Assembly: GCF_000150275.1 (NCBI RefSeq)
Contig: NW_002060949.1
Location: forward strand, 4,160,449-4,224,448
Direction: 5' to 3'
Length of the DNA: 64,000 nt
From: Trichoplax adhaerens
Taxonomy: Eukaryota; Animalia; Placozoa
Numbering within the stretch: the first letter of the stretch is position 1; each line of letters starts with the position of its first letter. The notes under the pieces are model-generated. The model had not been told where the DNA came from and did no database searches. It worked only from the letters and a program-made list of their open reading frames with translations. Shown here piece by piece: positions 25,383-37,807 of this stretch. A program made the translations under genes and the position numbers.

Positions 25383-26465
25383 ATGCGGTAAGCTATACAC
25401 ACCGAAGAAGCTTAAATGTAAAATGCATCATTAAAACATATTATAGCATTTTTCGGATAATTTAGGGTACAAATGGTATTATACTTAAAGCTGTTATAGC
25501 AAATTTAGACTCTATACGTTATTTCCTACCATATTAAGTAGCTAGCAAGCATAATGATAGTTTCATAATCGAATCAGGATCGCCTGTTATGGCTTTAACT
25601 CCAAACAAAAAGTAGCGAATAGTCCCTGGCGGTAGTAAGAGATTATATTGTTATTTCTGTTTCACCGTAGGACAATTACGGTATTAATTCTATCGCATGA
25701 TTTTCGATATTTATCAACATCGATTTCTCAGCTGTCTTAACTGACCAAACACAGTATACACTAACTTTCTGATTCATTATTGACAGTAGGAGAAAGCAGA
25801 TGAGATACATTGTGATCTTTTTTCTCATGTAAGAGGATAACAATTACTATTTTTTTAGCTATAAAGCTATAGGATATTGCCTGGCAATCTTAATATTGAT
25901 AACAGTACCTGGCTTGCAGGGAGAAACTGTTAGAAAGTTTTGCTTTCCAGATGTTGCTCAGTGGCTGATAGAACATTGTCCTATACATGGAAAGTCAGCA
26001 TATAATTCTCGTAAGTACGAAATTGATCGTTTATTATGAGTATGATACCAAAAACTTGCTTCCCTTCATCGTTTGCGATTTTACCCAACGAATATTCCTA
26101 GTATCGACTTAATAGACGATCGTTGACATAAAATAGACTGATAATATAAAGTACAGTGTATCTGTAATACTACTTTCACATAAGGAAAAATTAATTTTTA
26201 TAGCTCCGCTATTATCGATCTTTATTCATGATCTAGTTTTCCTGTTGAACATCGTAAGCTGCTGTATGCCAACTAATTAATCTTAAATGATGCGAAAAAT
26301 ATCAAAGCCTACGCCAAAGTAAAGTTAATATCTACCTCTTTTTAATTTACTTTTAATTTAGGTTATCTGACCAAATTTATCGTTTCCTCTCTCAAAAACC
26401 TAAACGAAGAGTGTTGTTATACCGCAGGATGTACCGCTGCTAACGTTATTAAAAACTACTGTTAA
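25383..26465 (+). CDS. Insulin-like peptide precursor 4 (86 aa), absent from the ORF track
   Basis: TATAAAA at 25286. Exons 25383-25387 (ATG CG|gtaag), 25859-26010 and 26362-26465: MRYKAIGYCLAILILITVPGLQGETVRKFCFPDVAQWLIEHCPIHGKSAYNSRYLTKFIVSSLKNLNEECCYTAGCTAANVIKNYC*. Confidence 0.85.
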
Positions 26466-27137
26466 AATTTAAAGGTTTTTTTTAATTATAGAGTAAAAGT
26501 GCAAGTACAGTATACAGCGAGGATTCGACTAGTTTAAAATAATAAGAAAAGAGTGCCACAACACTAATCCGCTTGTTATTGACATGCCTTTTTCTTGATA
26601 ATAATGATTAAATTAATTTACAGAAAATAGCTATATTCGGTCTTACTTCTACATAGCGTAGTACCTTAACTGGCTACCATTTATTGCACAACTCGTGATC
26701 ACGTACCGAAAAACTGTAGTGTGCATGTTTATTGGATCCTGATAATTTTATAAATCTTTCGCATAATAAAGAGAATGCATGGTAAACTTAACCAAAACTC
26801 TTTTTAATAAAGCAAAGACTTTTTACTATCTCATTGTCCTCCATTACATAGGCGTTATGTTCAGTAGTAGTTGCAATGACGCTTCCAATTTCCTGGCTAG
26901 ATTTCGTTCGTGTCTTGATTCTTTATCGCAATATTCATAGAAAAGAGTACGTGAATTTAAAATCCAAGCAATCTAGGTCATCGCGTGCAAGATAGCCCTG
27001 ATAATTATATTTAATTATATATAATGTATAACGTATGATACCATAGACGGAAAAATGAGGAAATAAACGTGTATAAATCAGTACTTTCTATCTCGATTTC
27101 CTATTGTATTACCCATAGCAAATAATTAATATACTGT

Positions 27138-27495
27138 ATTAAATTTCAATTTAATCAATGTACGTAGTTACTATATATACATGCTATTGGTCCCATTCGA
27201 TTCTTGATTTCCAATAGCAGTGTTTATGAGGAATAATTTATACGACTGAGTTGGATATATTAAATTTCATTTCAACTAATGTACTGTGCGTAGTTCCTAT
27301 ATACATGCGATTGATCTCTTTCGATTCTTGATTTTCAATAGCAGTGTTTATGAGAAATTATTCATGCAGACGAGTACGTCATATTTCAATTAACTAATGC
27401 ACGCCGTTACTATACACAAGCTATTGGTTTCTTTCGATTCTCGATTCCCAATAGCAGTGTTCATGAGAAATCATAATTTATCCAACCGAGTTGCA
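27138..27495. repeat. Tandem repeat, about 120-bp unit x3
   Basis: ttcgattctYgattYYcaatagcagtgttYatgag occurs at about 27197, 27320 and 27433 with similar flanks. Confidence 0.8.
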
Positions 27496-28080
27496 ATTTA
27501 TTAAGCGATGCATATCCATTGTCCAATTGTAGAGTGTATATAAGTTGGGCTAGTACTGTGTATTCTCCATGTTGCAGTAAAGATGTATTGTAGTAGTCCC
27601 TTTCGTATCTCAATTTACCATTGCAATATCCCTAAATGGACATACTGTAATTTCTCACATATCGAATTTCATTCCATTTAGCCGAACCTTTCTCAGATCG
27701 AACACATCATCAATTTAATATAAGAGATATTATGCAAGCATACGCTCGCGGACTGTGACGACACTTGCTGCATCGATTGCAATAGTAGAGTACAGTATCG
27801 TGAAATTGGACAAGAAATTATACAGTACACTCATGTATAGTTGCTTTCATTCTACGAGGAATGATTTTCTATATTGCACTGCAATCAAGCACAGCAGTCC
27901 ATTCTTGTAGAGGAAAAGTACCGGTCTTCTCCTCATTCTCAATATCTCAATAAATTCAATCTTCTTTTTAATATCTTAAATGGCGAAAGCATCGTTGACA
28001 GCTGTTTGTGCAAGCGATAGTCGGTCGATCAGTGCAATCAGTATGTTACTAGGAAAGAAGTACAGACGTCTAGGATGGAC

Positions 28081-28310
28081 AGTACCTCGCAGTACAGTAA
28101 CGCTGACAGTACTGCACTGTACAGTGTAGACATGTGATGCGTTTTTTCTTATGCTGTACAGTACTGTACATACAGTACATCAGCGTTGTTGATAATATAA
28201 TGTTTAATATGGATCACTACACTGTACTGTACAGTGTACAGTACATATGGATCACGATGGAGTCACAGTACTGTACGTACGGTACATGTACTGTACACGA
28301 GCGATAGTAC
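28081..28310. promoter_or_regulatory. CAGTA/TACTG-TGTACA array upstream of MRPL13
   Basis: Dense tgtacagtactgtaca-type palindromes immediately 5' of the first exon. Confidence 0.55.
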
Positions 28311-28361
28311 CGCACTAGACGCGCTGGTAGCTTTGCTCTCCCGTTCATCGCACGATGCAAT

Positions 28362-29899
28362 ATGTCTTCCTTTCATCGAGCTAGTCAGGTAAGCTAGGAA
28401 ATCATGCTACATTAATACTTCATGAAAGAGAGATAGAAAGCACTACAGCGTTGAGATAGTTGGATAGAAAAGCATACATGATGAGACTAATAGAATCTCC
28501 TATACTTCTCTTTCGACACGGATGCAACTCTGCAGAGTTTGCGTACTCATGCACGTATGTGGTATTTAATCGATGCCAAAGATCAAAAAGTTGGGAGATT
28601 AGCTACATTTGTTGTTAAATTATTGCAAGGAAAGACCAAACCTATCTATCATCCTGCCGGTAATAGTTTAGTTAAATGATATAGAATAAATTGTTGCAGA
28701 TTGTGAGTGGTTTAATTGACTTTTTTCTCCCTTCGTATTGATTCAAAAGCTGATGTAGGAGATTTCGTTGTCATTGTCAACACTCAAGATGTTGTATTCA
28801 CTGGCAAAAAGTGGAATGACAAGTTATATCGACATCATACGGGGTACTTCAGATGATTTTATAGCTATGGCTATACATCTAGCTTATCTTTTAATTGCTT
28901 ACCTTTATTTCGCTGGAATAGTTCAGTTTTTTGATTAAAATATTGTCGTTTATTACAATCAAGATATCCTGGTGGCTTGAAAGAAATTAAAGCCAAAGAT
29001 CTCCACGCAAAAGATCCCCGAGAGGTGGGTTACTATTTCCTCTTGAACTGGTTGTATCATTTTACTATCTTAGTAAAGTAATTGCAAACATCCATAATAC
29101 TAGTTTTTGACATAGAAGTATGACAATCATGCCTCTCTTTCCCTTCTATCTCATAAGGCTATCAATATCAAACACATGTAAAATGTGTATCAATTTTAAT
29201 AAAAGCTGATCGTATTCGAAGTTCATGTACATAAATTACTCACATTTAATCCTTTGTAATGCATGTAACATTCCTGCTTACCAATACTTATCCCACCGCA
29301 GGTTTTAAGAAAGGCTATCTATGGCATGCTGGCAAAGAACAATTTACGGTACACCTTTATGCGCCGTCTATATTTATACAAGGACAAGGTTAGGTGCATC
29401 ACCAGTCGTACATCGTAATTATGCTGTAGAATGGTCGTGTACTGTATACTGTATCATATTGAAGCTTTAGCAAATTAGCCGTATCGAGAATCTCCATCAA
29501 CACCTAGAATACCGTATTTTTAATGATAGCAATAGCTTTGATGACAGGAAGATCCTTTAATAACTTGTAATCATTTTATGCTTTATCGTATACTTTTATT
29601 AACCCAAAAAACTATTGCAATATTAATCTCCGTCAACACCTTCTAGAATACCGTATTTTTAATGATAGCAATAGCTTTGATGACAGGAAGATCCTTTAAT
29701 GACTTGTAATCATTTTATGCTTTATCGTATACTTTTATTAACACAAAAAACTATTGCAATATTTTGATTAAATTCACAGAAACATCCATATAAAAACAAC
29801 ATTACACAGGAATTAACAGGACCATGCAAACCGGCTAAAAAATTACAAGACTATACACCCGCTGAAATTGAAAACTACCCTTATAAGAACTTATTTTAA
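28362..29899 (+). CDS. MRPL13: Mitochondrial ribosomal protein uL13m
   Basis: Exons 28362-28388, 28536-28659, 28750-28843, 28964-29024, 29302-29388 and 29780-29899: MSSFHRASQ..ARMWYLIDAKDQKVGRLA..LQGKTKPIYHPAADVGDFVVIVN..KWNDKLYRHHTGYPGG..AIYGMLAKN..LQDYTPAEIENYP. Confidence 0.95.
29489..29763. repeat. Recent tandem duplication (about 136 bp x2) in the last MRPL13 intron
   Basis: Two near-identical copies of ctagaataccgtatttttaatgatagcaatagctttgatgacaggaagatcctttaat...aaaaaactattgcaatatt. Confidence 0.92.
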
Positions 29900-30238
29900 T
29901 GTTTTATATCTATTAAACTAAGAATGTTATGCTACAAATAAAAATTTCTCAATGCGACTGTTGATTATTATTTCTTAATTACTATAGTTATTGGGGCTAT
30001 TCGGTATTTATTATAACCCTCATACAGATGATTATCTTAACGATCAGTTTAATGATTTATTTAGTATTCAAAAGTATTCAGACACCATCGATTAGTTATA
30101 CAGTACTTCATTCTACTATAGCTCTATTCTGTAATCTGTATAACAGATGATATACATAATAAAAAATGTGGCACCTGAGGCAATCATCTACAGGTATCGT
30201 TCTTATACAACAACTTCTTACAAGTCAGAATTTTGATA

Positions 30239-32379
30239 TCAATGAGATGGAGAATACAAATTGATAACATGACGAAAATAGCCAAGCTTAGAGTATGAAA
30301 CAGCATTGTTTTTTAAATCTATTGAGGCAATAACATCTGCTGGCTCATCCAGAACTTCGAATCTATAATATAATTTATCGCGCTTTTCATCGATATTCGC
30401 TATATTTCCAGAGAATACAGGTCTAAATGCACCTATTATTTTGAAAAAAAAGACATACATATTATTCATAACGATAAGTACGAGTATTATAAGTATTAAA
30501 ATATTGCAAATCGTTCCAGAAGGTATATAAAACTATATTGCAACTTAAGCGGTAGTTTATGTCATAGTAGGATAGCTTATCAATTTACTGTTGAAACTAT
30601 GTATTTTGTATTAAATTAAAAATCAAGCATAAATCTGATTTCTAATAAGAGTACATAACTAGTACGATAGTAATATCCTTAAAAACAGTTATCAATCGAG
30701 GAAGTGATTAAATATGAAAGACGTGATATTTCAATTGTTGCATTACCATTAGGTGCAATCTGAAATTTCTTTGTTATGTGTCCATTTTTAGGATTGACGC
30801 TAACTAGGTACCATTGCGGTGCACGCTTGAAATCCTTTCGAGGTGCAACTCCAGGAGATACAGCCAATAGCTCTCCAGTTTTCTTATAGAACTATAGTCC
30901 AAAAATAAAGTATACAAATGCTGAACTATATAGCTAATCCAAATTTATAATGACTAAGGAGTAATGTAATCTATAAACTAATAAATAATTAACTGAGTTA
31001 ATATGGACAGTTTTATAAAAATAATCGTGAGAAGCTCATATGCATAAAGTATGAAATTGTAAACTAACATGAATGGCTCCTATCGTATATCTGGATACGT
31101 TAAGGTTAACAATTTCGATCCCCGGTTGAGTTCCGTAGTGAACAACGTAGAGTTTTGCTAACAACTTATCAGCTGAATTTTCATTCCCCATGAGTAAATA
31201 ACAGATTTTATTTTTGGTATCTAAAGTTGACCATAAAAAGTTGACGTATAAATTTTCCGGTTGAGAATTTATGATTGGTTGGAAGAGCTTAGGTTTTAAA
31301 TTCATTCTTGACACTAGAAAGGAAAAGTAGCCAGGTTTTCTCGGCAATTTCACTATTTGTAAAGTAATAAATCCTCCTTCTTCATCATCCATGATAGCGT
31401 TTATCGGGGCAATATTTACAGCTTCTGCAGCGAGTGAATCATTTGCTTTAGTGTTGCCCTTTGCTCTGTCGATAGCAAACAACTTATTAGCAGTTGCATC
31501 GGCATTACTCCCTTTATGAACGATGGTGTACATCATGTCACTTTTGTAAACGTAACAGAACGCTTGAATAGCAACATAATCGATAACTTGCTTGGCCGAA
31601 TATACTCGAAATTGATTGGTTAATGGGGCACTAAGTGTTGATAATTTAATAATTTCTCCAGTAGCAGTGTCAATTTTAACATAATTCGCTTCATCAAGAT
31701 CGAAAGGGCTTGCAGAAATACCATAGATGTAATTACCCGAGCTAGCAGCAGAAAATCGATCAGATAATAAAGCAGCAAATTTTAAATAGTCACTTGCTTG
31801 CTTTGGTAACGTCATCCTTTGCGATCGCCACTCCTTCCAGCCTTGATACACTTCCTCCTCAGCTTCATGATGATCATCATTACTCTTCTTATGACTGAAT
31901 GATACATCAGAACATTGAATAAACGTTTGTTCTCCAGGTTTATGAGAGTTATATCGTATACGTAATACGCAGTGGGAACAGTTAATATTTGGGATAGTAA
32001 TTGGTACCGTGTAGTTTTGTCTATTACTTTGGGCATAAGCGTAAAAATCCATAATGACAGCTAAAACCACAAACGGTTTGCTATCGTTGCCAGCTGCATA
32101 AGAAATATCCATATAGCCTGGATATCCAATTTCATAATGGTTATAATTTTGTTGCCATTTAATAAAAAAGGTCTGGCCAGGAGTGATATGCTTCTTAATT
32201 TTACCGTCGAATTTTTGTCCACCACAAGGTTCACCGTGGCGAAAACAGGTTGGATTACCGGCAGTGGAAATATCAAATTTTCCTCGTTGCTTTGGATTGA
32301 TCATACAAATATGTGCCTCAATTTGGACTAACAAGGCTAAACTGATCAGTATAATCGCCACAGAATGTATCAATTTCAT
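30239..32379 (-). CDS. Secreted protein (549 aa): LPMO-like His-brace domain plus probable beta-propeller
   Basis: Exons 32379-31069, 30891-30747 and 30432-30239 join three ORF-track pieces in phase. A 22-aa signal peptide ends IEA|H. Motifs include HICMINPKQRG, PCGG, WQQNYNHY..PGYMDIS, ITIPNINCSHCVLR and FIQCSDV. The C-terminal half has repeated blade-like motifs (YVKIDTATGEI, LFAIDRAKGN, TLDTKNKICYL, LVSVNPKNGHI, IDEKRDKLYY). The gene model is solid; the function is inferred. Confidence 0.8.
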
Positions 32380-32995
32380 GATGTTCTACCAATACCGATG
32401 ACTATCTAACTCGTAAAAATAATTTGAGATCAAAATGTCCGAGCTAGAAATTGCATGCACGGTAATACGGATACTCCAAATTAATTCAAGTTGTATCGAA
32501 ATCCTACAGTACCTTCACACACTAAATACGCTTAGCAAATAGAGAAGAAGAAAATTTCCACTTGTACGGTTGCTACTGACGACGAGTACTGTGAAATACT
32601 GTATTACAATATTGACCAGTGCAACACTGCATAGACTACTACTGTAGATATCTGCAGTAGTATTCCATGAACGCTGGTATACTAACCTAACCTTAATTAA
32701 TTAATTAATTAATAACATCTAAAATTCCACGACGCGGTACAAAAACGGTTTGATACACAAACAATACCATCTGCCAGTCAAACAGATAGAAAACATAGCA
32801 AACTACCGTTACATATGAGATTGTATACGTAGAACTTGCATACTAAAAGGAAAATCTTTCTCAATTTAGTCTTGATATATCATTCCAGTCATCACATCTG
32901 ATGACAGAATAGTTTAATTCAATTTGGAAATGAGCTAATTTGGAGGATTAACTGTTAATTTTCTTTTCTTGTCTATCTATTGATCAGAAATTGAT

Positions 32996-34046
32996 CTACG
33001 CTGTGACCTTTAAGGCTTTTTCCGTCACGTGCCTCTCACATTCTAGAAGAGTCGTAAACTTATTGCAGTCAAAGAGCTCTCTCCACTGCCTAGAATTGAT
33101 GGCGTTGCATAGCTGTAATTAATGATCTGTTTATTGCTTAAATGAAATAATACTATTAACAATAATAAAATAGCAATTACAATTAATTGAATAAATAACT
33201 GCAGCACACTAGTTAAGCTATAGTATCATTCACTATTTTCTATAATATCTGACCTGATGTACTGTTGTCGAGTAGTAACTGAGTAATCCCGCTAGGCCCC
33301 CATAATACGGTAAATCATCGATCGATTTACTAGCAATATATTAATAAAGTACGTATGCTGTTACAATAACAGGACTAGTAATACGTACGCCAGTAAAATA
33401 CGCCGATACATTATGGTATATAGAATCTGTAGACAAGGCAAGAGAAATTATCGAAATATATTATAAATTCACTACTGGGCTAGATGAACGTATAACGGTG
33501 TATTAGTAGTGATTACAAAGCATCATAATAAAGTGCTCTAGAGTTTCTCATTTGCTCGTTTAGTTCATCTCCTGCAGTAGATTCAAACCGCTAAATTCTA
33601 CATTGTTGTAACTGGAGAAGCCTTTATAACGGGTACATAATTTGCTGTACTTTATGAGAGTGTATCTGGACTGTCATCTTTTAAAATCTATTAAGTGTAC
33701 TAAAACAAAGACTGAGATTTTCTACTACAATATGCTATTACGAAGGCTTTCCTTCTCCGAGAATTACTAAGTATTAATATATTCGAACTAACAGTCAATT
33801 GAGGCACAGTTATAATATTTCCTTCTATTTTATGCAGAGATATCAAGTGTAATAGAGACGATCAGTATTAATATCTGTCTTCATCTTCGAAGTATGTACT
33901 CTAAAAAAGCTGATCATACGCTGATTCTATAACATTACGAGTAGCAAATACACTTCTACTGACGTACTGTATCACCCATCATAAAACATATACAAACCTT
34001 TATCTAGTGAATTAGCCAAGTTGAAAACTATCAAGCATAATGCCAT
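32996..34046 (-). CDS. Candidate small secreted orphan protein (about 115 aa, 5 short exons)
   Basis: Exons 34046-33998, 33824-33793, 33590-33517, 33329-33254 and 33112-32996 are GT-AG, phase-compatible and stop-free. I recognise no homology. The last three exons are the more convincing. Confidence 0.42.
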
Positions 34047-34814
34047 TAATAGAATACAGCATATTAGCCACTCGGCTTAACTGCTTTATCTCATATCGAA
34101 AAAACAAGCTTGCAGCGGATACGAGGCATTAACGATAAACTATGTCTTCGTATATAGCGTCTGTTGATCAGAATTAACCATATTTTATTTAATTTTTAAT
34201 TGTAATGAGTGATACACTATTGCAGACAAACAAACATTGTTACCAAATAATTACTTCATAATTTCAAAGGATGGTTACGCATTTTATTAGCTATACTTTA
34301 AAACTGTGATTTTTAACAGTTATAATCTCTATATACGCAAGTACTAAAGTATTATACTCTGTATATTAATTTACCAATATAAGATACGAATACGCTTTTA
34401 AAATTAACCACAAATAATAATGTATTTACATCACTGTAATGAGACCTAAACGTACAGCAAATGTGTATCAATTTGACAAAGAACGATTAGGAAGGTATAT
34501 AAGATTTGTAGATATTATTTTTGATTTATAAATTGGATGCTATAACTAATTACATTAGTTAGCGTATTCGCGATTATATTAAAAGATATTACAATTTACA
34601 AGGATTCATAACTCACAGTGTACAGATATATATAAGAGCTGCATACTAAATTGTACATTCATTTCACAACTTTCATGTTAACATTCGTACGCATTAGCCA
34701 TATCATATAAATTACTGGCAATCTCAGTTATGCCATATGTTCAAGTCTAATAATTAATATAATGAAAGACAGTGCAATGTTAAATTGAATACAAATATAT
34801 CTAGCTGATGAAGT

Positions 34815-37807
34815 CTACTCATCTTGTATAGCCGTCATTATGATTAAATTAATAGTAGTAGGATACTGGACGATTAAATCAGCAACTTCAGTATGAGACC
34901 ACTCTAGGACACATTGATTATTAATTGATACAATAACCTGGCCAGCCTAGTATAAGACGATGCGTCAGCTTTTAAGTAAAAGTTGTACATAATCTAAAAC
35001 TTCTCATACAGGCATATTAGCCATAATCACATATTCGTATATTGCTAGAGACGCTGTAAATATGCAAACCTTAAGACCGGCAGCATAACCTGGGCCATTC
35101 GGATCGACAGTCTGTACGTAGACAGGAGCTTTACCTCGAACGACAAATCCAAACCCAACGTTATCACGAATAATCTAACGATAGAGTAAAATAGTATTGT
35201 TGTCATTTTTTAATAGAAAACCTTATCCTCTACATATCACAAGATGAGTCTATAAAACCTTTATATTTTTCTTGACATAAGGTGCATTTGGATCTCGCAA
35301 TTCTTTGAGCGTAATAGGTTTCTTTAAAACTAAAACATTGAAGAAGTTTATTGTACGCCATAATGTTTTCAATCGTAAAAATGCAAATAACTAGAAAGTA
35401 GTTCGTTACCTGATCCAGTCTTATCAACGGGTTTGGTTAAAAGATCTTCATCTGTAATTGGTCTAGTATTTTTATCTAGCAGTTTTCAACATTAAAAGTT
35501 TTTACTATAAATATAAGCATATTTACTTTTTCTTTAACTAATTAACTAAAATCTCTACTGTACCCACTATCTAAAAATATCGGATATTGAAGTGATAAAT
35601 AGTACCAATATTGAGCAATGATTGAATAAAGCAACCAATTTCATTACGTTAACAATTCTGACCGATATGTACTGTACAAGTAATGCATAATAGGTTGGTC
35701 TGTTTAAACTTACCAATAGAGGATCCATCAACGTGAAAATTTGCTTTAGTAGTATGCGAAATTGATGAAGCATCATTTTCGTCGCACAAGTCGCCTATTT
35801 TGACATTTAAAGCATCCAATCGGAACTGGTAGAATATCTTTTGATCCTTAAAATGGTGGTCGTCAGTGACTAGTATTAAAAAAAGAAGCACATTGAATAA
35901 AAAGTTAATAAAATTAAACTAAGGAGGATTACAGTACCAAAAGTAATCAAAAATTGCGAAATAGTGGCATAGAAAGCAAAGCTTCGGGTAAAGTATTACC
36001 ATGTCTGATAACTCCGTTTTCAAGAAGTTTTCTACATGACGCTTCTGCCTCTGGCCTGAAACCTGCACGTCCTTGTTGCACGAACCAAGTTACCAAATCC
36101 GAGCCCAAAAAACATTTAAAAGTTTTTTGAGATTTATGAGGGGTATAGTCACGAAACAAGCTGCCATACTCTGCATGTAAGCTAAATGTTGATAATTAAA
36201 CGTTCAAAGTTAACACCAGAACGTTAATTATACAGTGTCAATTAGTTCTAAATCGAAGCAACTGAAGAGTAGATATTCTGTATGCTTTCTACTTTAGTAT
36301 TATGTTTGTAATCATGAACTAAGTAAGATTTCCTTCATGTGATACTAAGGTTTAACCAAATTATTTCCAAGAGAAGACTAATATGGAAACTCTCAATGAC
36401 TAAGCAACGCCATTTTTTCAAAATTATCCGTTGTACGAGCGTACTTACAGGTAACGCAGTCTTTCACCTTCTAAAAGTACATCAACTTCAACATTGGTAT
36501 GAAACGTTTCATCGTCGACACGAAATCGATAATATAATCGTTCATCTTTAAATTGATGATCATCGCAAACTATAAATGGGATAAATGTTAATTTATTTGC
36601 TGTAGTCGGATGGACAGAAATTTTCAAGTAGGCAATAAATTATCAAGTTTATTTTAGCTGTATAGCGCTGTATAATAAGGCAACTTACTAAAATCATGCC
36701 TATGATAGCGAAATAAAGCAAGAACTGGATATAAAGTCAATTTTATCCTTTTGAACGATTATACTCGTATGCTAATTTTATTATATTATCTAATTGTTAC
36801 CGCGTTCAGTATAATTAGACTTCCGCGATCAGAATATCACAATCACAATATCACAATATCTCTACGGTACAGTATACAGCGATATTGATATGTTGTAATT
36901 AATTATTGATCAAGATAGTTTATTAACTTTTGCAGTCAAGCTTTGCATTTTAAAATCAATTCGCAGTATTTTCCATCAGTTGATGGAAAATAATGCCAAA
37001 TTAATTAAAGATGATATAATGAAAACACTTGACGTTGAGATTGGTGTACCTTAGGATAGTACCATACTCTACTTTTCGACAAGAGATCGTAAGTATACAG
37101 TCGATCGATCACTGTAGTCCATACTAATTACTCTACTACATACCGTTTATTACTCATTCGTTTAAATCATACGCGTATTTCTGTATCTTACAAATATTCG
37201 AAAAAAAAAGAAGAGGATCTGATCTATTACAAATCTGGCTGTATCACTTACCCTTTGATATCAATATTTTTAAAGGTAAAATAATAATACATGAATACGA
37301 ACATAATAAGAACTATTCGTATACGTGACTTGGAAACTAGCAATAATGTCAAGTACACCTAGAGTATTTATTTATTTATCTCTTTATTGGTGTAATTACA
37401 GTACAGTAAATAAAAAAGTCTCAAAAGTCATCCTAGGAAGGTATGATGATTGATTTTAATGCTATAAAATTTATAAATGAGAAGTCATGAAACAAACCGA
37501 TATCAATCTAATTTTTTTACAATAGTTTAATTCACATACCATGATGAATGATATTCTTCTCTAGTAATTTTTGCATTGAAGCGATGGCATTTTGCCTATT
37601 TAAAACTTCTTCATGTAGTACTAACCAATCGATTAGTTCTGTGCCTTCAAAGCACTTAGGATAGGAACGTAAATGATATCGTCTATTTTGAATAATAGTC
37701 TCACTGCCAGCTTTATCATGAAGTCTTAAACGTAAATTTTCACCTATCATTATCAGATCTCGATCCGATAAGCTGTCTGCAATAGTAGAACTTCTCCTTG
37801 TTTCCAT
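34815..37807 (-). CDS. DEPTOR: DEP domain-containing mTOR-interacting protein (DEP-DEP-PDZ)
   Basis: Exon 1 (37807-37540) IGENLRLRLH..IQNRRYHLRSYPKCFEGTELIDWL; VCDDHQFKDERLYYRFRVDDETF; second DEP CFLGSDLVTWFVQQG; VLKKPITLKELRDPNAPYVKK; PDZ GFGFVVRGKAPVYVQTVDPNGPGYAAGLK; stop at 34815-34817. Confidence 0.93.

What the first reader, a model, noticed from the sequence alone, without database searches (positions are those of the whole stretch)
30239..32379. Secreted LPMO-like histidine-brace domain fused to a probable beta-propeller in an animal genome
Seen: a signal peptide ends just before His23, making His the mature N-terminus. A second His (H81, NHY), a late F-x-Q-C-S-D motif (F153/Q155) and six Cys lie within about 140 aa, followed by a His/acidic linker (HKKSNDDHHEAEEE) and about 330 aa of repeated beta-hairpin motifs. 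Established: an N-terminal His, an internal His and an axial Tyr/Phe form the copper histidine brace of lytic polysaccharide monooxygenases and of non-catalytic LPMO-like copper proteins such as X325/Bim1. Inference: the motif order (H..P..R, PCG, H..PG..IS, P...C..C.L, F/Y..C.D) looks more like the bacterial SCE4755-type monooxygenase-like proteins, as I recall them, than like the known animal AA15 family. I know of no characterised His-brace plus propeller fusion. It could be a secreted oxidative enzyme for external digestion of algal or biofilm polysaccharide, or a copper-handling protein, with the propeller binding substrate or supplying redox partnership.
Basis: partly seen in the sequence, partly recalled or inferred. 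Interest (0 to 1): 0.85.

Follow-up and report, generated by a model that had tools for sequence, protein, structure and literature searches.

The report
Secreted copper His-brace protein with propeller
This Trichoplax gene encodes a secreted protein whose N-terminal half looks like a copper-binding "histidine-brace" oxidase of the LPMO kind, joined to a six-bladed propeller; it belongs to a strongly conserved, unstudied family found widely among eukaryotes.

Summary
The gene is Trichoplax adhaerens TRIADDRAFT_58259 (549 aa, minus strand, three exons). RNA contigs from four runs confirm both introns.

After a signal peptide, His23 opens an LPMO-fold domain (aa 23-162). Its best solved structural match is AA15 (Z 14.3), followed by X325, AA11, AA13 and AA10. 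No solved structure is a sequence relative.

In the homologues fetched, His23 is kept in 131 of 132, His81 in 148 of 149 and Phe153 in 165 of 167. The one exception lacks both histidines. In all 146 complete homologues the residue before the His is A, G, S or C, as signal-peptidase cleavage requires.

Residues 215-549 form a six-bladed propeller with no specific kin.

By sequence the nearest named family is the uncharacterised bacterial SCE4755 family (hhalign 97.8 %). The protein scores below that family's cut-off, so it is not a member.

The same fusion occurs in sponge, echinoderms, amphioxus, molluscs, an annelid, choanoflagellates, Gefionella and Ancoracysta. Dictyostelids carry the brace domain alone, and several protists join it to a different tail.

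I found no paper on the family. Copper binding, catalysis and substrate remain untested. The most likely reading is a secreted copper oxidase with a propeller as holder.

The parts
32380..32476 (-). 5' untranslated region (approximate)
   Evidence: Transcript contigs extend to 32441-32476 upstream of the ATG (table 8).
32314..32379 (-). Signal peptide, aa 1-22 (ends QIEA)
   Evidence: Hydrophobic leader. In 146/146 complete homologues position -1 is A/G/S/C and position -3 is small or aliphatic; the His sits at median position 20.
32311..32313 (-). Codon of His23, predicted mature N-terminus and first brace ligand
   Evidence: Translation. H in 131/132 homologues. Aligns with the His after the signal peptide of a bona fide SCE4755 protein and of the Trichoplax DOMON-fused paralogue.
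31894..32313 (-). LPMO-fold histidine-brace domain, aa 23-162, with six Cys
   Evidence: Pfam LPMO_10 26.7 bits, cut-off 23. NF043005 40 bits. AF2 model pLDDT 87. VIA-align: AA15 5msz Z 14.3, X325 12.0, AA11 11.7. Foldseek lists LPMO families at the top.
32137..32139 (-). Codon of His81 (motif QQN-x-NH-Y/W), predicted second brace ligand
   Evidence: H in 148/149 homologues; the only exception (P0038) also lacks His23.
31921..31923 (-). Codon of Phe153 (motif E-x-x-F-x-Q-C-x-D), predicted axial residue
   Evidence: F in 165/167 homologues. The motif aligns with the FYNCSD end of an AA10 catalytic domain and with Tyr in SCE4755.
31738..31893 (-). Linker, aa 163-214, including HKKSNDDHHEAEEE
   Evidence: Not conserved in sequence or length among orthologues. 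Modelled as two helices with pLDDT of about 52-64.
31069..31737 (-). Six-bladed beta-propeller, first part (aa 215-437, rest of exon 1)
   Evidence: About 24 strands in groups of four. VIA-align aa 215-549: ROS1 YWTD propeller Z 20.8, rmsd 3.3 over 262 residues; Kelch and TolB Z about 17-18.
30892..31068 (-). Intron 1 (177 nt, GT..AG)
   Evidence: Skipped in contigs of four runs (table 5).
30747..30891 (-). Exon 2 (145 nt), propeller continued
30433..30746 (-). Intron 2 (314 nt, GT..AG)
   Evidence: Skipped in contigs of four runs; the cut is shifted by 2 as the tool notes. Sequence read.
30239..30432 (-). Exon 3, last propeller blade, ending with stop codon 30241-30239

Best explanation
The gene encodes a secreted protein with two folded parts.

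N-terminal part. Signal-peptidase cleavage after Ala22 exposes His23. Its amino group and side chain, together with His81, hold one copper ion in a histidine brace on an LPMO-type beta-sandwich. Phe153 lies under the metal, and Glu150 or Gln155 acts as a second-sphere residue. I take this domain to be an oxidative catalyst that uses O2 or H2O2 after reduction of Cu(II) to Cu(I). Its substrate would be extracellular, most plausibly a glycan of food organisms or of the cell surface.

C-terminal part. The six-bladed propeller is the less constrained accessory part, which holds or positions the substrate or a partner.

Shown here: the gene model and its expression as spliced RNA; the fold of both parts; the conservation pattern; homology to SCE4755-type proteins; and the wide eukaryotic range.

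Inferred only: copper binding, catalysis, the substrate and the role of the propeller.
For: Cleavage rule met in 146/146 homologues.

H23, H81 and F153 are kept in 131/132, 148/149 and 165/167 homologues. Both histidines are lost together in P0038.

The top structural matches are all LPMO or LPMO-like copper proteins and align from residue 1: AA15 Z 14.3 with rmsd 2.4 over 130 residues, then X325, AA11, AA13 and AA10.

The C-terminal motif aligns with that of AA10. From my own knowledge, this Phe is the axial residue in CBP21.

E150 is kept in 164/168 homologues and aligns with Glu in SCE4755. A conserved second-sphere Glu or Gln is typical of catalytic LPMOs (abstract of PMC10472438, listed).

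The brace domain is far more constrained than the propeller. Identity to Trichoplax is 42-56 % for the brace domain against 17-33 % for the propeller in a sponge, choanoflagellates, Gefionella and Ancoracysta. Of 46 columns that are at least 85 % conserved, 39 lie in the brace domain. That fits a catalytic core with an accessory module.

The full-length model has pTM 0.83.
Against: No coordinates were available, so the distance between His23 and His81 was not measured.

No assay or metal analysis exists.

Pfam BIM1-like matches in 20 of 33 orthologues keep a non-catalytic, X325-like role open.

The unusually high conservation of many polar residues is atypical of polysaccharide-surface LPMOs and may point to a different, more specific substrate.

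The domain-domain test gave no verdict.

No cell-type expression data were found.
Confidence: 0.5

Rival explanations
1. A non-catalytic copper-binding or copper-handling protein, working like fungal X325/Bim1. The brace captures Cu from the medium and hands it on, and the propeller docks to a receptor or transporter.
For: The N-terminal motif (H, then P-x-Q-R-G, then P-C-G-G) and Pfam BIM1-like matches in 20/33 orthologues, best E 4.2e-7. X325 is the second-best structural match, Z 12.0. Invariant acidic residues D111 and D158 could supply an extra ligand.
Against: P0001 itself has no BIM1-like match at E <= 0.01. It has no C-terminal hydrophobic tail of the kind a GPI signal needs. The axial Phe and the conserved Glu near it resemble catalytic AA10 sites. 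Copper scavenging alone would not be expected to demand 42-56 % identity over the whole domain across distant eukaryotic lineages.
Confidence: 0.25
2. An ordinary member of the animal AA15 family: a chitin- or cellulose-cleaving LPMO with an unusual carbohydrate-binding appendage.
For: The best solved structural match is TdAA15A. The Pfam LPMO_10 score is just above the cut-off. UniProt calls it a chitin-binding type-4 domain protein. An axial Phe is seen in chitin-active AA10s and in a few AA15s (PMC5823890).
Against: Only the C-terminal half of the LPMO_10 profile matches (positions 82-183 of 183), at 26.7 bits. No PDB LPMO is found by sequence profile. Identity to 5msz is 18 %. The SCE4755 profile fits better and over its whole length. 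The family motifs H-[ILV]-C-x3-P-x-QRG and QQN-x-NH gave no sequence-profile match to any solved LPMO.
Confidence: 0.12
3. A metal-free binding or adhesion protein in which an LPMO-like sandwich and a propeller act only as lectin-like or matrix modules.
For: Beta-sandwich carbohydrate-binding modules also appear lower in the structural lists. The propeller's closest structural matches are extracellular receptor propellers such as ROS1, Sevenless and LRP6.
Against: It does not explain why the residue right after the signal peptide is His in 131/132 homologues, together with H81 and F153. It also does not explain why both histidines disappear together in the one exception.
Confidence: 0.08

Closest known systems
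SCE4755 family polysaccharide monooxygenase-like proteins (NCBIfam NF043005; bacterial, uncharacterised)
   Same: A signal peptide followed directly by His, with the same order of motifs: H...P..R, PCGG, internal His, C-x-x-C, E-x-x-[FY]-x-Q-C-x-D. NF043005 is the best-scoring library family and is matched over its whole length. hhalign to a bona fide member (P0230, 146 bits) gives 97.8 %, E 7e-13.
   Different: It scores 40 bits against a cut-off of 75, so it is not a member. It is eukaryotic, has a Cys at position +2, the motif QQN-x-NH and an axial Phe where P0230 has Tyr. It carries a six-bladed propeller. The function of SCE4755 itself is unknown.
AA15 LPMOs (TdAA15A, PDB 5msz)
   Same: Closest solved fold: Z 14.3, rmsd 2.4 A over 130 residues, aligned from residue 1. 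Both occur in animals. Both match Pfam LPMO_10.
   Different: 18 % identity and only a half-profile Pfam match. Its own family motifs. A propeller fusion. No activity data.
X325 / Bim1 LPMO-like copper proteins of fungi (PDB 6ibh/6ibi; Pfam PF20238)
   Same: Similar size and fold (Z 12.0). The N-terminal motif resembles the BIM1-like profile, which matches 20/33 orthologues weakly.
   Different: No GPI-type tail. P0001 is below Pfam's cut-off. Conserved axial Phe and nearby Glu. Propeller fusion.
AA10 LPMOs (CBP21, ScLPMO10C, AsLPMO10B)
   Same: The C-terminal strand motif F-Y-x-C-x-D aligns. Axial Phe. Z about 10-11.
   Different: No significant sequence match over the N-terminal half. Eukaryotic. 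Different accessory domain.
Six-bladed extracellular propellers (YWTD of ROS1/Sevenless/LRP6, Kelch, TolB)
   Same: Fold and blade number: Z 17-21 over about 260 residues.
   Different: Identity is 13 % or less and no Pfam propeller family matches P0001. Only 2/33 orthologues touch DUF6923. No YWTD or Kelch Pfam family matched.

Membership tests
LPMO superfamily (histidine-brace copper proteins) | His is the first residue of the mature protein after signal-peptide cleavage | tested here: met
   Leader plus the (-3,-1) rule in 146/146 homologues, with His at median position 20. This is a prediction, not protein sequencing.
LPMO superfamily (histidine-brace copper proteins) | A second conserved His and an axial Phe/Tyr | tested here: met
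   H81 in 148/149 and F153 in 165/167 homologues; co-loss of H23 and H81 in P0038.
LPMO superfamily (histidine-brace copper proteins) | Immunoglobulin-like beta-sandwich LPMO fold | tested here: met
   Model pLDDT 87. The top 18 VIA-align matches are LPMO or LPMO-like structures, Z 9-14. Foldseek E 1e-5 to 1e-4.
LPMO superfamily (histidine-brace copper proteins) | The two His side chains and the amino terminus converge on one metal site | not testable with these tools
   The tools return no coordinates. The only support is that the alignments start at residue 1.
LPMO superfamily (histidine-brace copper proteins) | Copper binding and oxidative cleavage of a polysaccharide | not testable with these tools
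   Needs protein chemistry.
Pfam PF03067 LPMO_10 (AA10/AA15) | Score above the gathering cut-off over the domain | tested here: inconclusive
   26.7 bits against a cut-off of 23, but only profile positions 82-183 of 183. 19/33 orthologues match at E <= 0.01.
NCBIfam NF043005 SCE4755 family | Score above the curated cut-off (75 bits) | tested here: not met
   40.4 bits over profile positions 7-145 of 146. It is homologous (hhalign 97.8 %) but lies outside the family.
Pfam PF20238 BIM1-like (X325) | Score above the cut-off (27 bits) | tested here: not met
   No match for P0001 at E <= 0.01; weak matches in 20/33 orthologues, best E 4.2e-7.
Pfam PF20238 BIM1-like (X325) | C-terminal GPI-anchor signal | tested here: not met
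   The protein ends in a polar stretch after the last propeller strand, with no hydrophobic tail.
Six-bladed beta-propeller | Six four-stranded blades closing a ring | tested here: met
   About 24 strands at aa 217-545, pLDDT mostly 85-97. Z 17-21 to six-bladed YWTD, Kelch and TolB propellers.

The most novel reading that the evidence does not exclude
The family is an ancient eukaryotic copper oxygenase with a defined substrate that is not a crystalline polysaccharide. Candidates are a specific glycan, lipid or peptide group met during feeding on microbes or in surface defence. The propeller would be its dedicated substrate-presenting partner. That would be a new functional class of histidine-brace enzyme, present in the closest relatives of animals and in early-branching animals, with no vertebrate, insect or nematode member among the hits that carry a name.
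Probability: 0.25. Interest if true: 0.85.

Novelty: new variant of a known kind. Interest (0 to 1): 0.64.

Why it matters
Histidine-brace copper proteins are a small and intensively studied group, and each new LPMO family has opened new biology such as biomass digestion, moulting, virulence and copper uptake.

This family has hundreds of members. Its copper-site residues are nearly invariant, and its core is 42-56 % identical between Trichoplax and a sponge, choanoflagellates, a malawimonad and Ancoracysta. It has a fusion partner not described for any LPMO in the papers I could search. It has no solved structure and I found no paper on it.

The stand-alone form in Dictyostelium, and the fused form in Trichoplax and choanoflagellates, sit in tractable organisms. 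The question of what a copper oxidase of this kind does in phagotrophic and grazing eukaryotes is therefore directly testable.

If the protein turns out to be catalytic, it would also be a new source of oxidative enzymes.

Tried and rejected
Domain-domain docking: complex prediction with aa 23-165 against aa 210-549 gave no verdict (score 0.03). This is neither for nor against.

Bacterial relatives in their genomic context: two related-loci scans of genome contigs, one with the N-domain alignment and one with the SCE4755 member P0230, found nothing. I could therefore not read bacterial neighbourhoods.

PDB by sequence profile: no relative found. A KIBRA match at E 0.17 is chance.

Close stand-alone relatives by single sequence: only two fragments.

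Cell-type expression: gene id 58259 does not occur in the held supplements of two placozoan single-cell papers.

Literature: eight searches and four papers searched for key terms gave no description of this family. The signal-strapping paper PMC12537917 treats other, bacterial N-terminal-His proteins.

Redox-partner idea for the propeller (PQQ or sugar-dehydrogenase type): no Pfam match and no such structure among the top matches. Unsupported, though not excluded.

The His/acidic linker as a conserved metal site: rejected, because the linker varies in sequence and length among orthologues.

Protein Atlas hits for the propeller (DUF5074, DUF4394, DUF6923 and phage proteins at 0.90-0.91) are leads only.

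Full report
**What is there**

The window is AT-rich eukaryotic DNA of about 30-35 % GC. At 32379..31036 on the minus strand lies a 447-codon ORF, the only ORF of 90 aa or more in the 11 kb around it.

A search with exon 1 by reference returned a 100 % identical 549-aa database protein, TRIADDRAFT_58259 of Trichoplax adhaerens (P0001).

Exon pieces were searched by reference, and for full-length work I used the database protein by its id.

Contigs of four public runs from three studies, two of them on record as RNA, skip 30892-31068 and 30433-30746. Both skipped stretches have GT..AG ends on the minus strand. The contigs reach 32441-32476 at the 5' end.

The gene is therefore exon 1 at 32379-31069, exon 2 at 30891-30747 and exon 3 at 30432-30239 with the stop codon. 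It is transcribed and spliced as annotated.

**The N-terminal domain**

Residues 1-22 are a hydrophobic leader ending QIEA, and residue 23 is His.

No signal-peptide predictor was on hand, so I used comparison instead. In 146 complete homologues the equivalent His lies at median position 20 (range 14-43). Position -1 is A, G, S or C in all 146. Position -3 is small or aliphatic in all. Every leader has a hydrophobic core. That is the (-3,-1) pattern expected for signal-peptidase cleavage directly before the His.

Library matches were as follows:
- Pfam gives LPMO_10 at 26.7 bits (cut-off 23), but only over the second half of the profile.
- NCBIfam gives the SCE4755 family at 40 bits over the whole profile, below its cut-off of 75.
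- Among 33 orthologues, 20 touch BIM1-like and 19 touch LPMO_10, all weakly.

An AlphaFold2 model of residues 23-170, built with a 35-sequence alignment, has pLDDT 87. Foldseek finds AA11, AA10, AA15, X325, AA16 and AA9 structures at E 1e-5 to 1e-3.

The search that does not depend on Foldseek ranks TdAA15A first (Z 14.3, rmsd 2.4 A over 130 residues). Next come X325 (12.0), AA11 (11.7), AA13 (11.2) and many AA10s (about 10-11). Each alignment begins at residue 1 of both model and chain.

No solved structure is a relative by sequence profile.

**The brace residues**

An HMM of the domain was aligned to all proteins fetched. It gives:
- His23 in 131 of 132 sequences
- His81 in 148 of 149
- Phe153 in 165 of 167
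- Glu150 in 164 of 168
- four invariant Cys (25, 45, 52, 156)
- a pair of Cys (134, 137) that is kept or replaced in most cases together

The one protein without His23 (P0038, Gln) also lacks His81 (Tyr). That is what one expects if the two histidines serve one site.

His48 and His146, which are conserved in animals, are not conserved outside them.

The C-terminal motif aligns with F-Y-N-C-S-D of an AA10 catalytic domain. From my own knowledge, the Phe of this motif is the axial Phe187 of CBP21.

I could not measure the His-His distance, because the tools give no coordinates.

**The C-terminal domain**

The full-length model has pLDDT 81 and pTM 0.83. It shows a poorly defined, partly helical linker at 163-214. 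This linker contains the His/acidic stretch and is not conserved.

About 24 strands in fours then follow, from 217 to 545.

Foldseek and VIA-align place residues 215-549 on six-bladed propellers. ROS1 and Sevenless YWTD give Z 19-21, Kelch about 18, and TolB and LRP6 about 17, all at 13 % identity or less.

No Pfam propeller family matches P0001. Two orthologues touch DUF6923. The propeller has no recognisable specific kin.

**Relatives and range**

A profile search of 1.84 billion cluster representatives finds 735 at E <= 1e-3 and 149 at E <= 1e-30.

The brace-plus-propeller form occurs in:
- Trichoplax
- a sequence labelled scpid, which I take to be the sponge Sycon
- amphioxus, echinoderms and a crinoid
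- many molluscs and the annelid Owenia
- the choanoflagellates Salpingoeca macrocollata and Mylnosiga, the malawimonad Gefionella, and Ancoracysta

A second form joins the brace domain to about 200 other residues with faint Ependymin likeness. It occurs in Chromera, Entosiphon, Vermistella and a marine alga.

The domain alone, at about 165 aa, occurs in dictyostelids and Physarum.

No vertebrate, insect or nematode is among the named hits. This is not proof of absence.

The brace domain is 42-56 % identical between Trichoplax and these distant lineages, while the propeller is only 17-33 % identical. Of 46 highly conserved columns, 39 lie in the brace domain.

A bona fide SCE4755 protein (P0230, 146 bits) aligns to the family profile at 97.8 % probability. 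His aligns on His twice, Cys-x-x-Cys on Cys-x-x-Cys, and Glu150 on Glu. Phe153 aligns on Tyr.

**How it most likely works**

The pattern is that of a secreted mononuclear copper site of the histidine-brace type on an LPMO sandwich.

I rate an oxidative enzyme as more likely than a pure copper carrier, for these reasons:
- an axial Phe
- a conserved carboxylate three residues before the axial Phe
- an unusually constrained set of polar residues: Q31, R32, Q76, Q77, N78, N80, D111, R140, R142, Y143

The propeller is much freer to vary, and I read it as the holder of substrate or partner.

The substrate is unknown. The default guess is a glycan of prey or of the cell's own surface. However, the high conservation would also fit a more specific substrate.

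**Comparison and novelty**

The protein works like an LPMO or LPMO-like copper protein.

It is not a member of SCE4755 or of BIM1-like, since it falls below both cut-offs. It is at best a fringe match of Pfam LPMO_10.

Eight literature searches found no paper on this family or on any brace-propeller fusion. One phylogenetic note mentions early-branching LPMO_10 sequences with DOMON and EGF domains (PMC6950343). That fits a second Trichoplax family I met in passing, not this one.

I class the finding as a new variant of a known kind.

**What failed**

The docking test gave no verdict. Two genome scans for bacterial relatives were blank. No cell-type data were found.

Noticed in passing
G000:C1392, loci L006:2968-5298 (-), L007:4365-7043 (+), and a third match at G000:C1392:174368-174667 (+): Trichoplax has a second, distantly related family of at least three genes, two of them about 6 kb apart. 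After a signal peptide comes His (HIRL..P.AR) and an LPMO-like domain. It shares 24 % identity with the finding's domain, E 2e-7, with the two His and the Phe aligned, and scores 38 bits to SCE4755. Then come a Cys-rich EGF-like stretch, a low-complexity repeat region, two or three DOMON domains (Pfam E 1e-40 to 2e-57, with a faint CDH-cytochrome match) and a hydrophobic C-terminal tail. A brace domain tied to possible haem or electron-transfer DOMON modules deserves its own look. Voshol 2019 (PMC6950343) notes such DOMON/EGF plus LPMO_10 sequences as an early branch.
   Followed up: partly
proteins P0119, P0174, P0132, P0123, P0149: In Chromera, Entosiphon, Vermistella and marine algae the same brace domain is joined to about 200 residues with only faint Ependymin likeness (E 3e-4 to 4e-3), instead of to a propeller.
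   Followed up: partly
protein P0151 (Synstelium polycarpum): Here the brace-type domain lies at the C-terminus (aa 312-460) behind a PA14 domain. Its His cannot be the N-terminus unless the protein is processed or the gene model is wrong.
   Followed up: no
protein P0038 (Logan assembly): A full-length brace-plus-propeller paralogue of unknown animal source has Gln, Tyr and Tyr in place of His23, His48 and His81. It is probably a copper-free derivative.
   Followed up: no
window 26000-37000: Exon 1 of this gene (1311 nt) is the only ORF of 90 aa or more in 11 kb of otherwise short-exon DNA. Both introns lie in the last fifth of the coding sequence.
   Followed up: no
window 30156-30158: Transcript contigs of three runs carry four extra bases (G, AC, T) in the 3' untranslated region compared with the assembly. 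This is a strain difference or a small assembly error.
   Followed up: no
window 29900-30238 and beyond: Two transcript contigs run about 500 bases past the left end of the stretch laid (29900). This is either a long 3' UTR or a read-through into the next gene. Not resolved.
   Followed up: no
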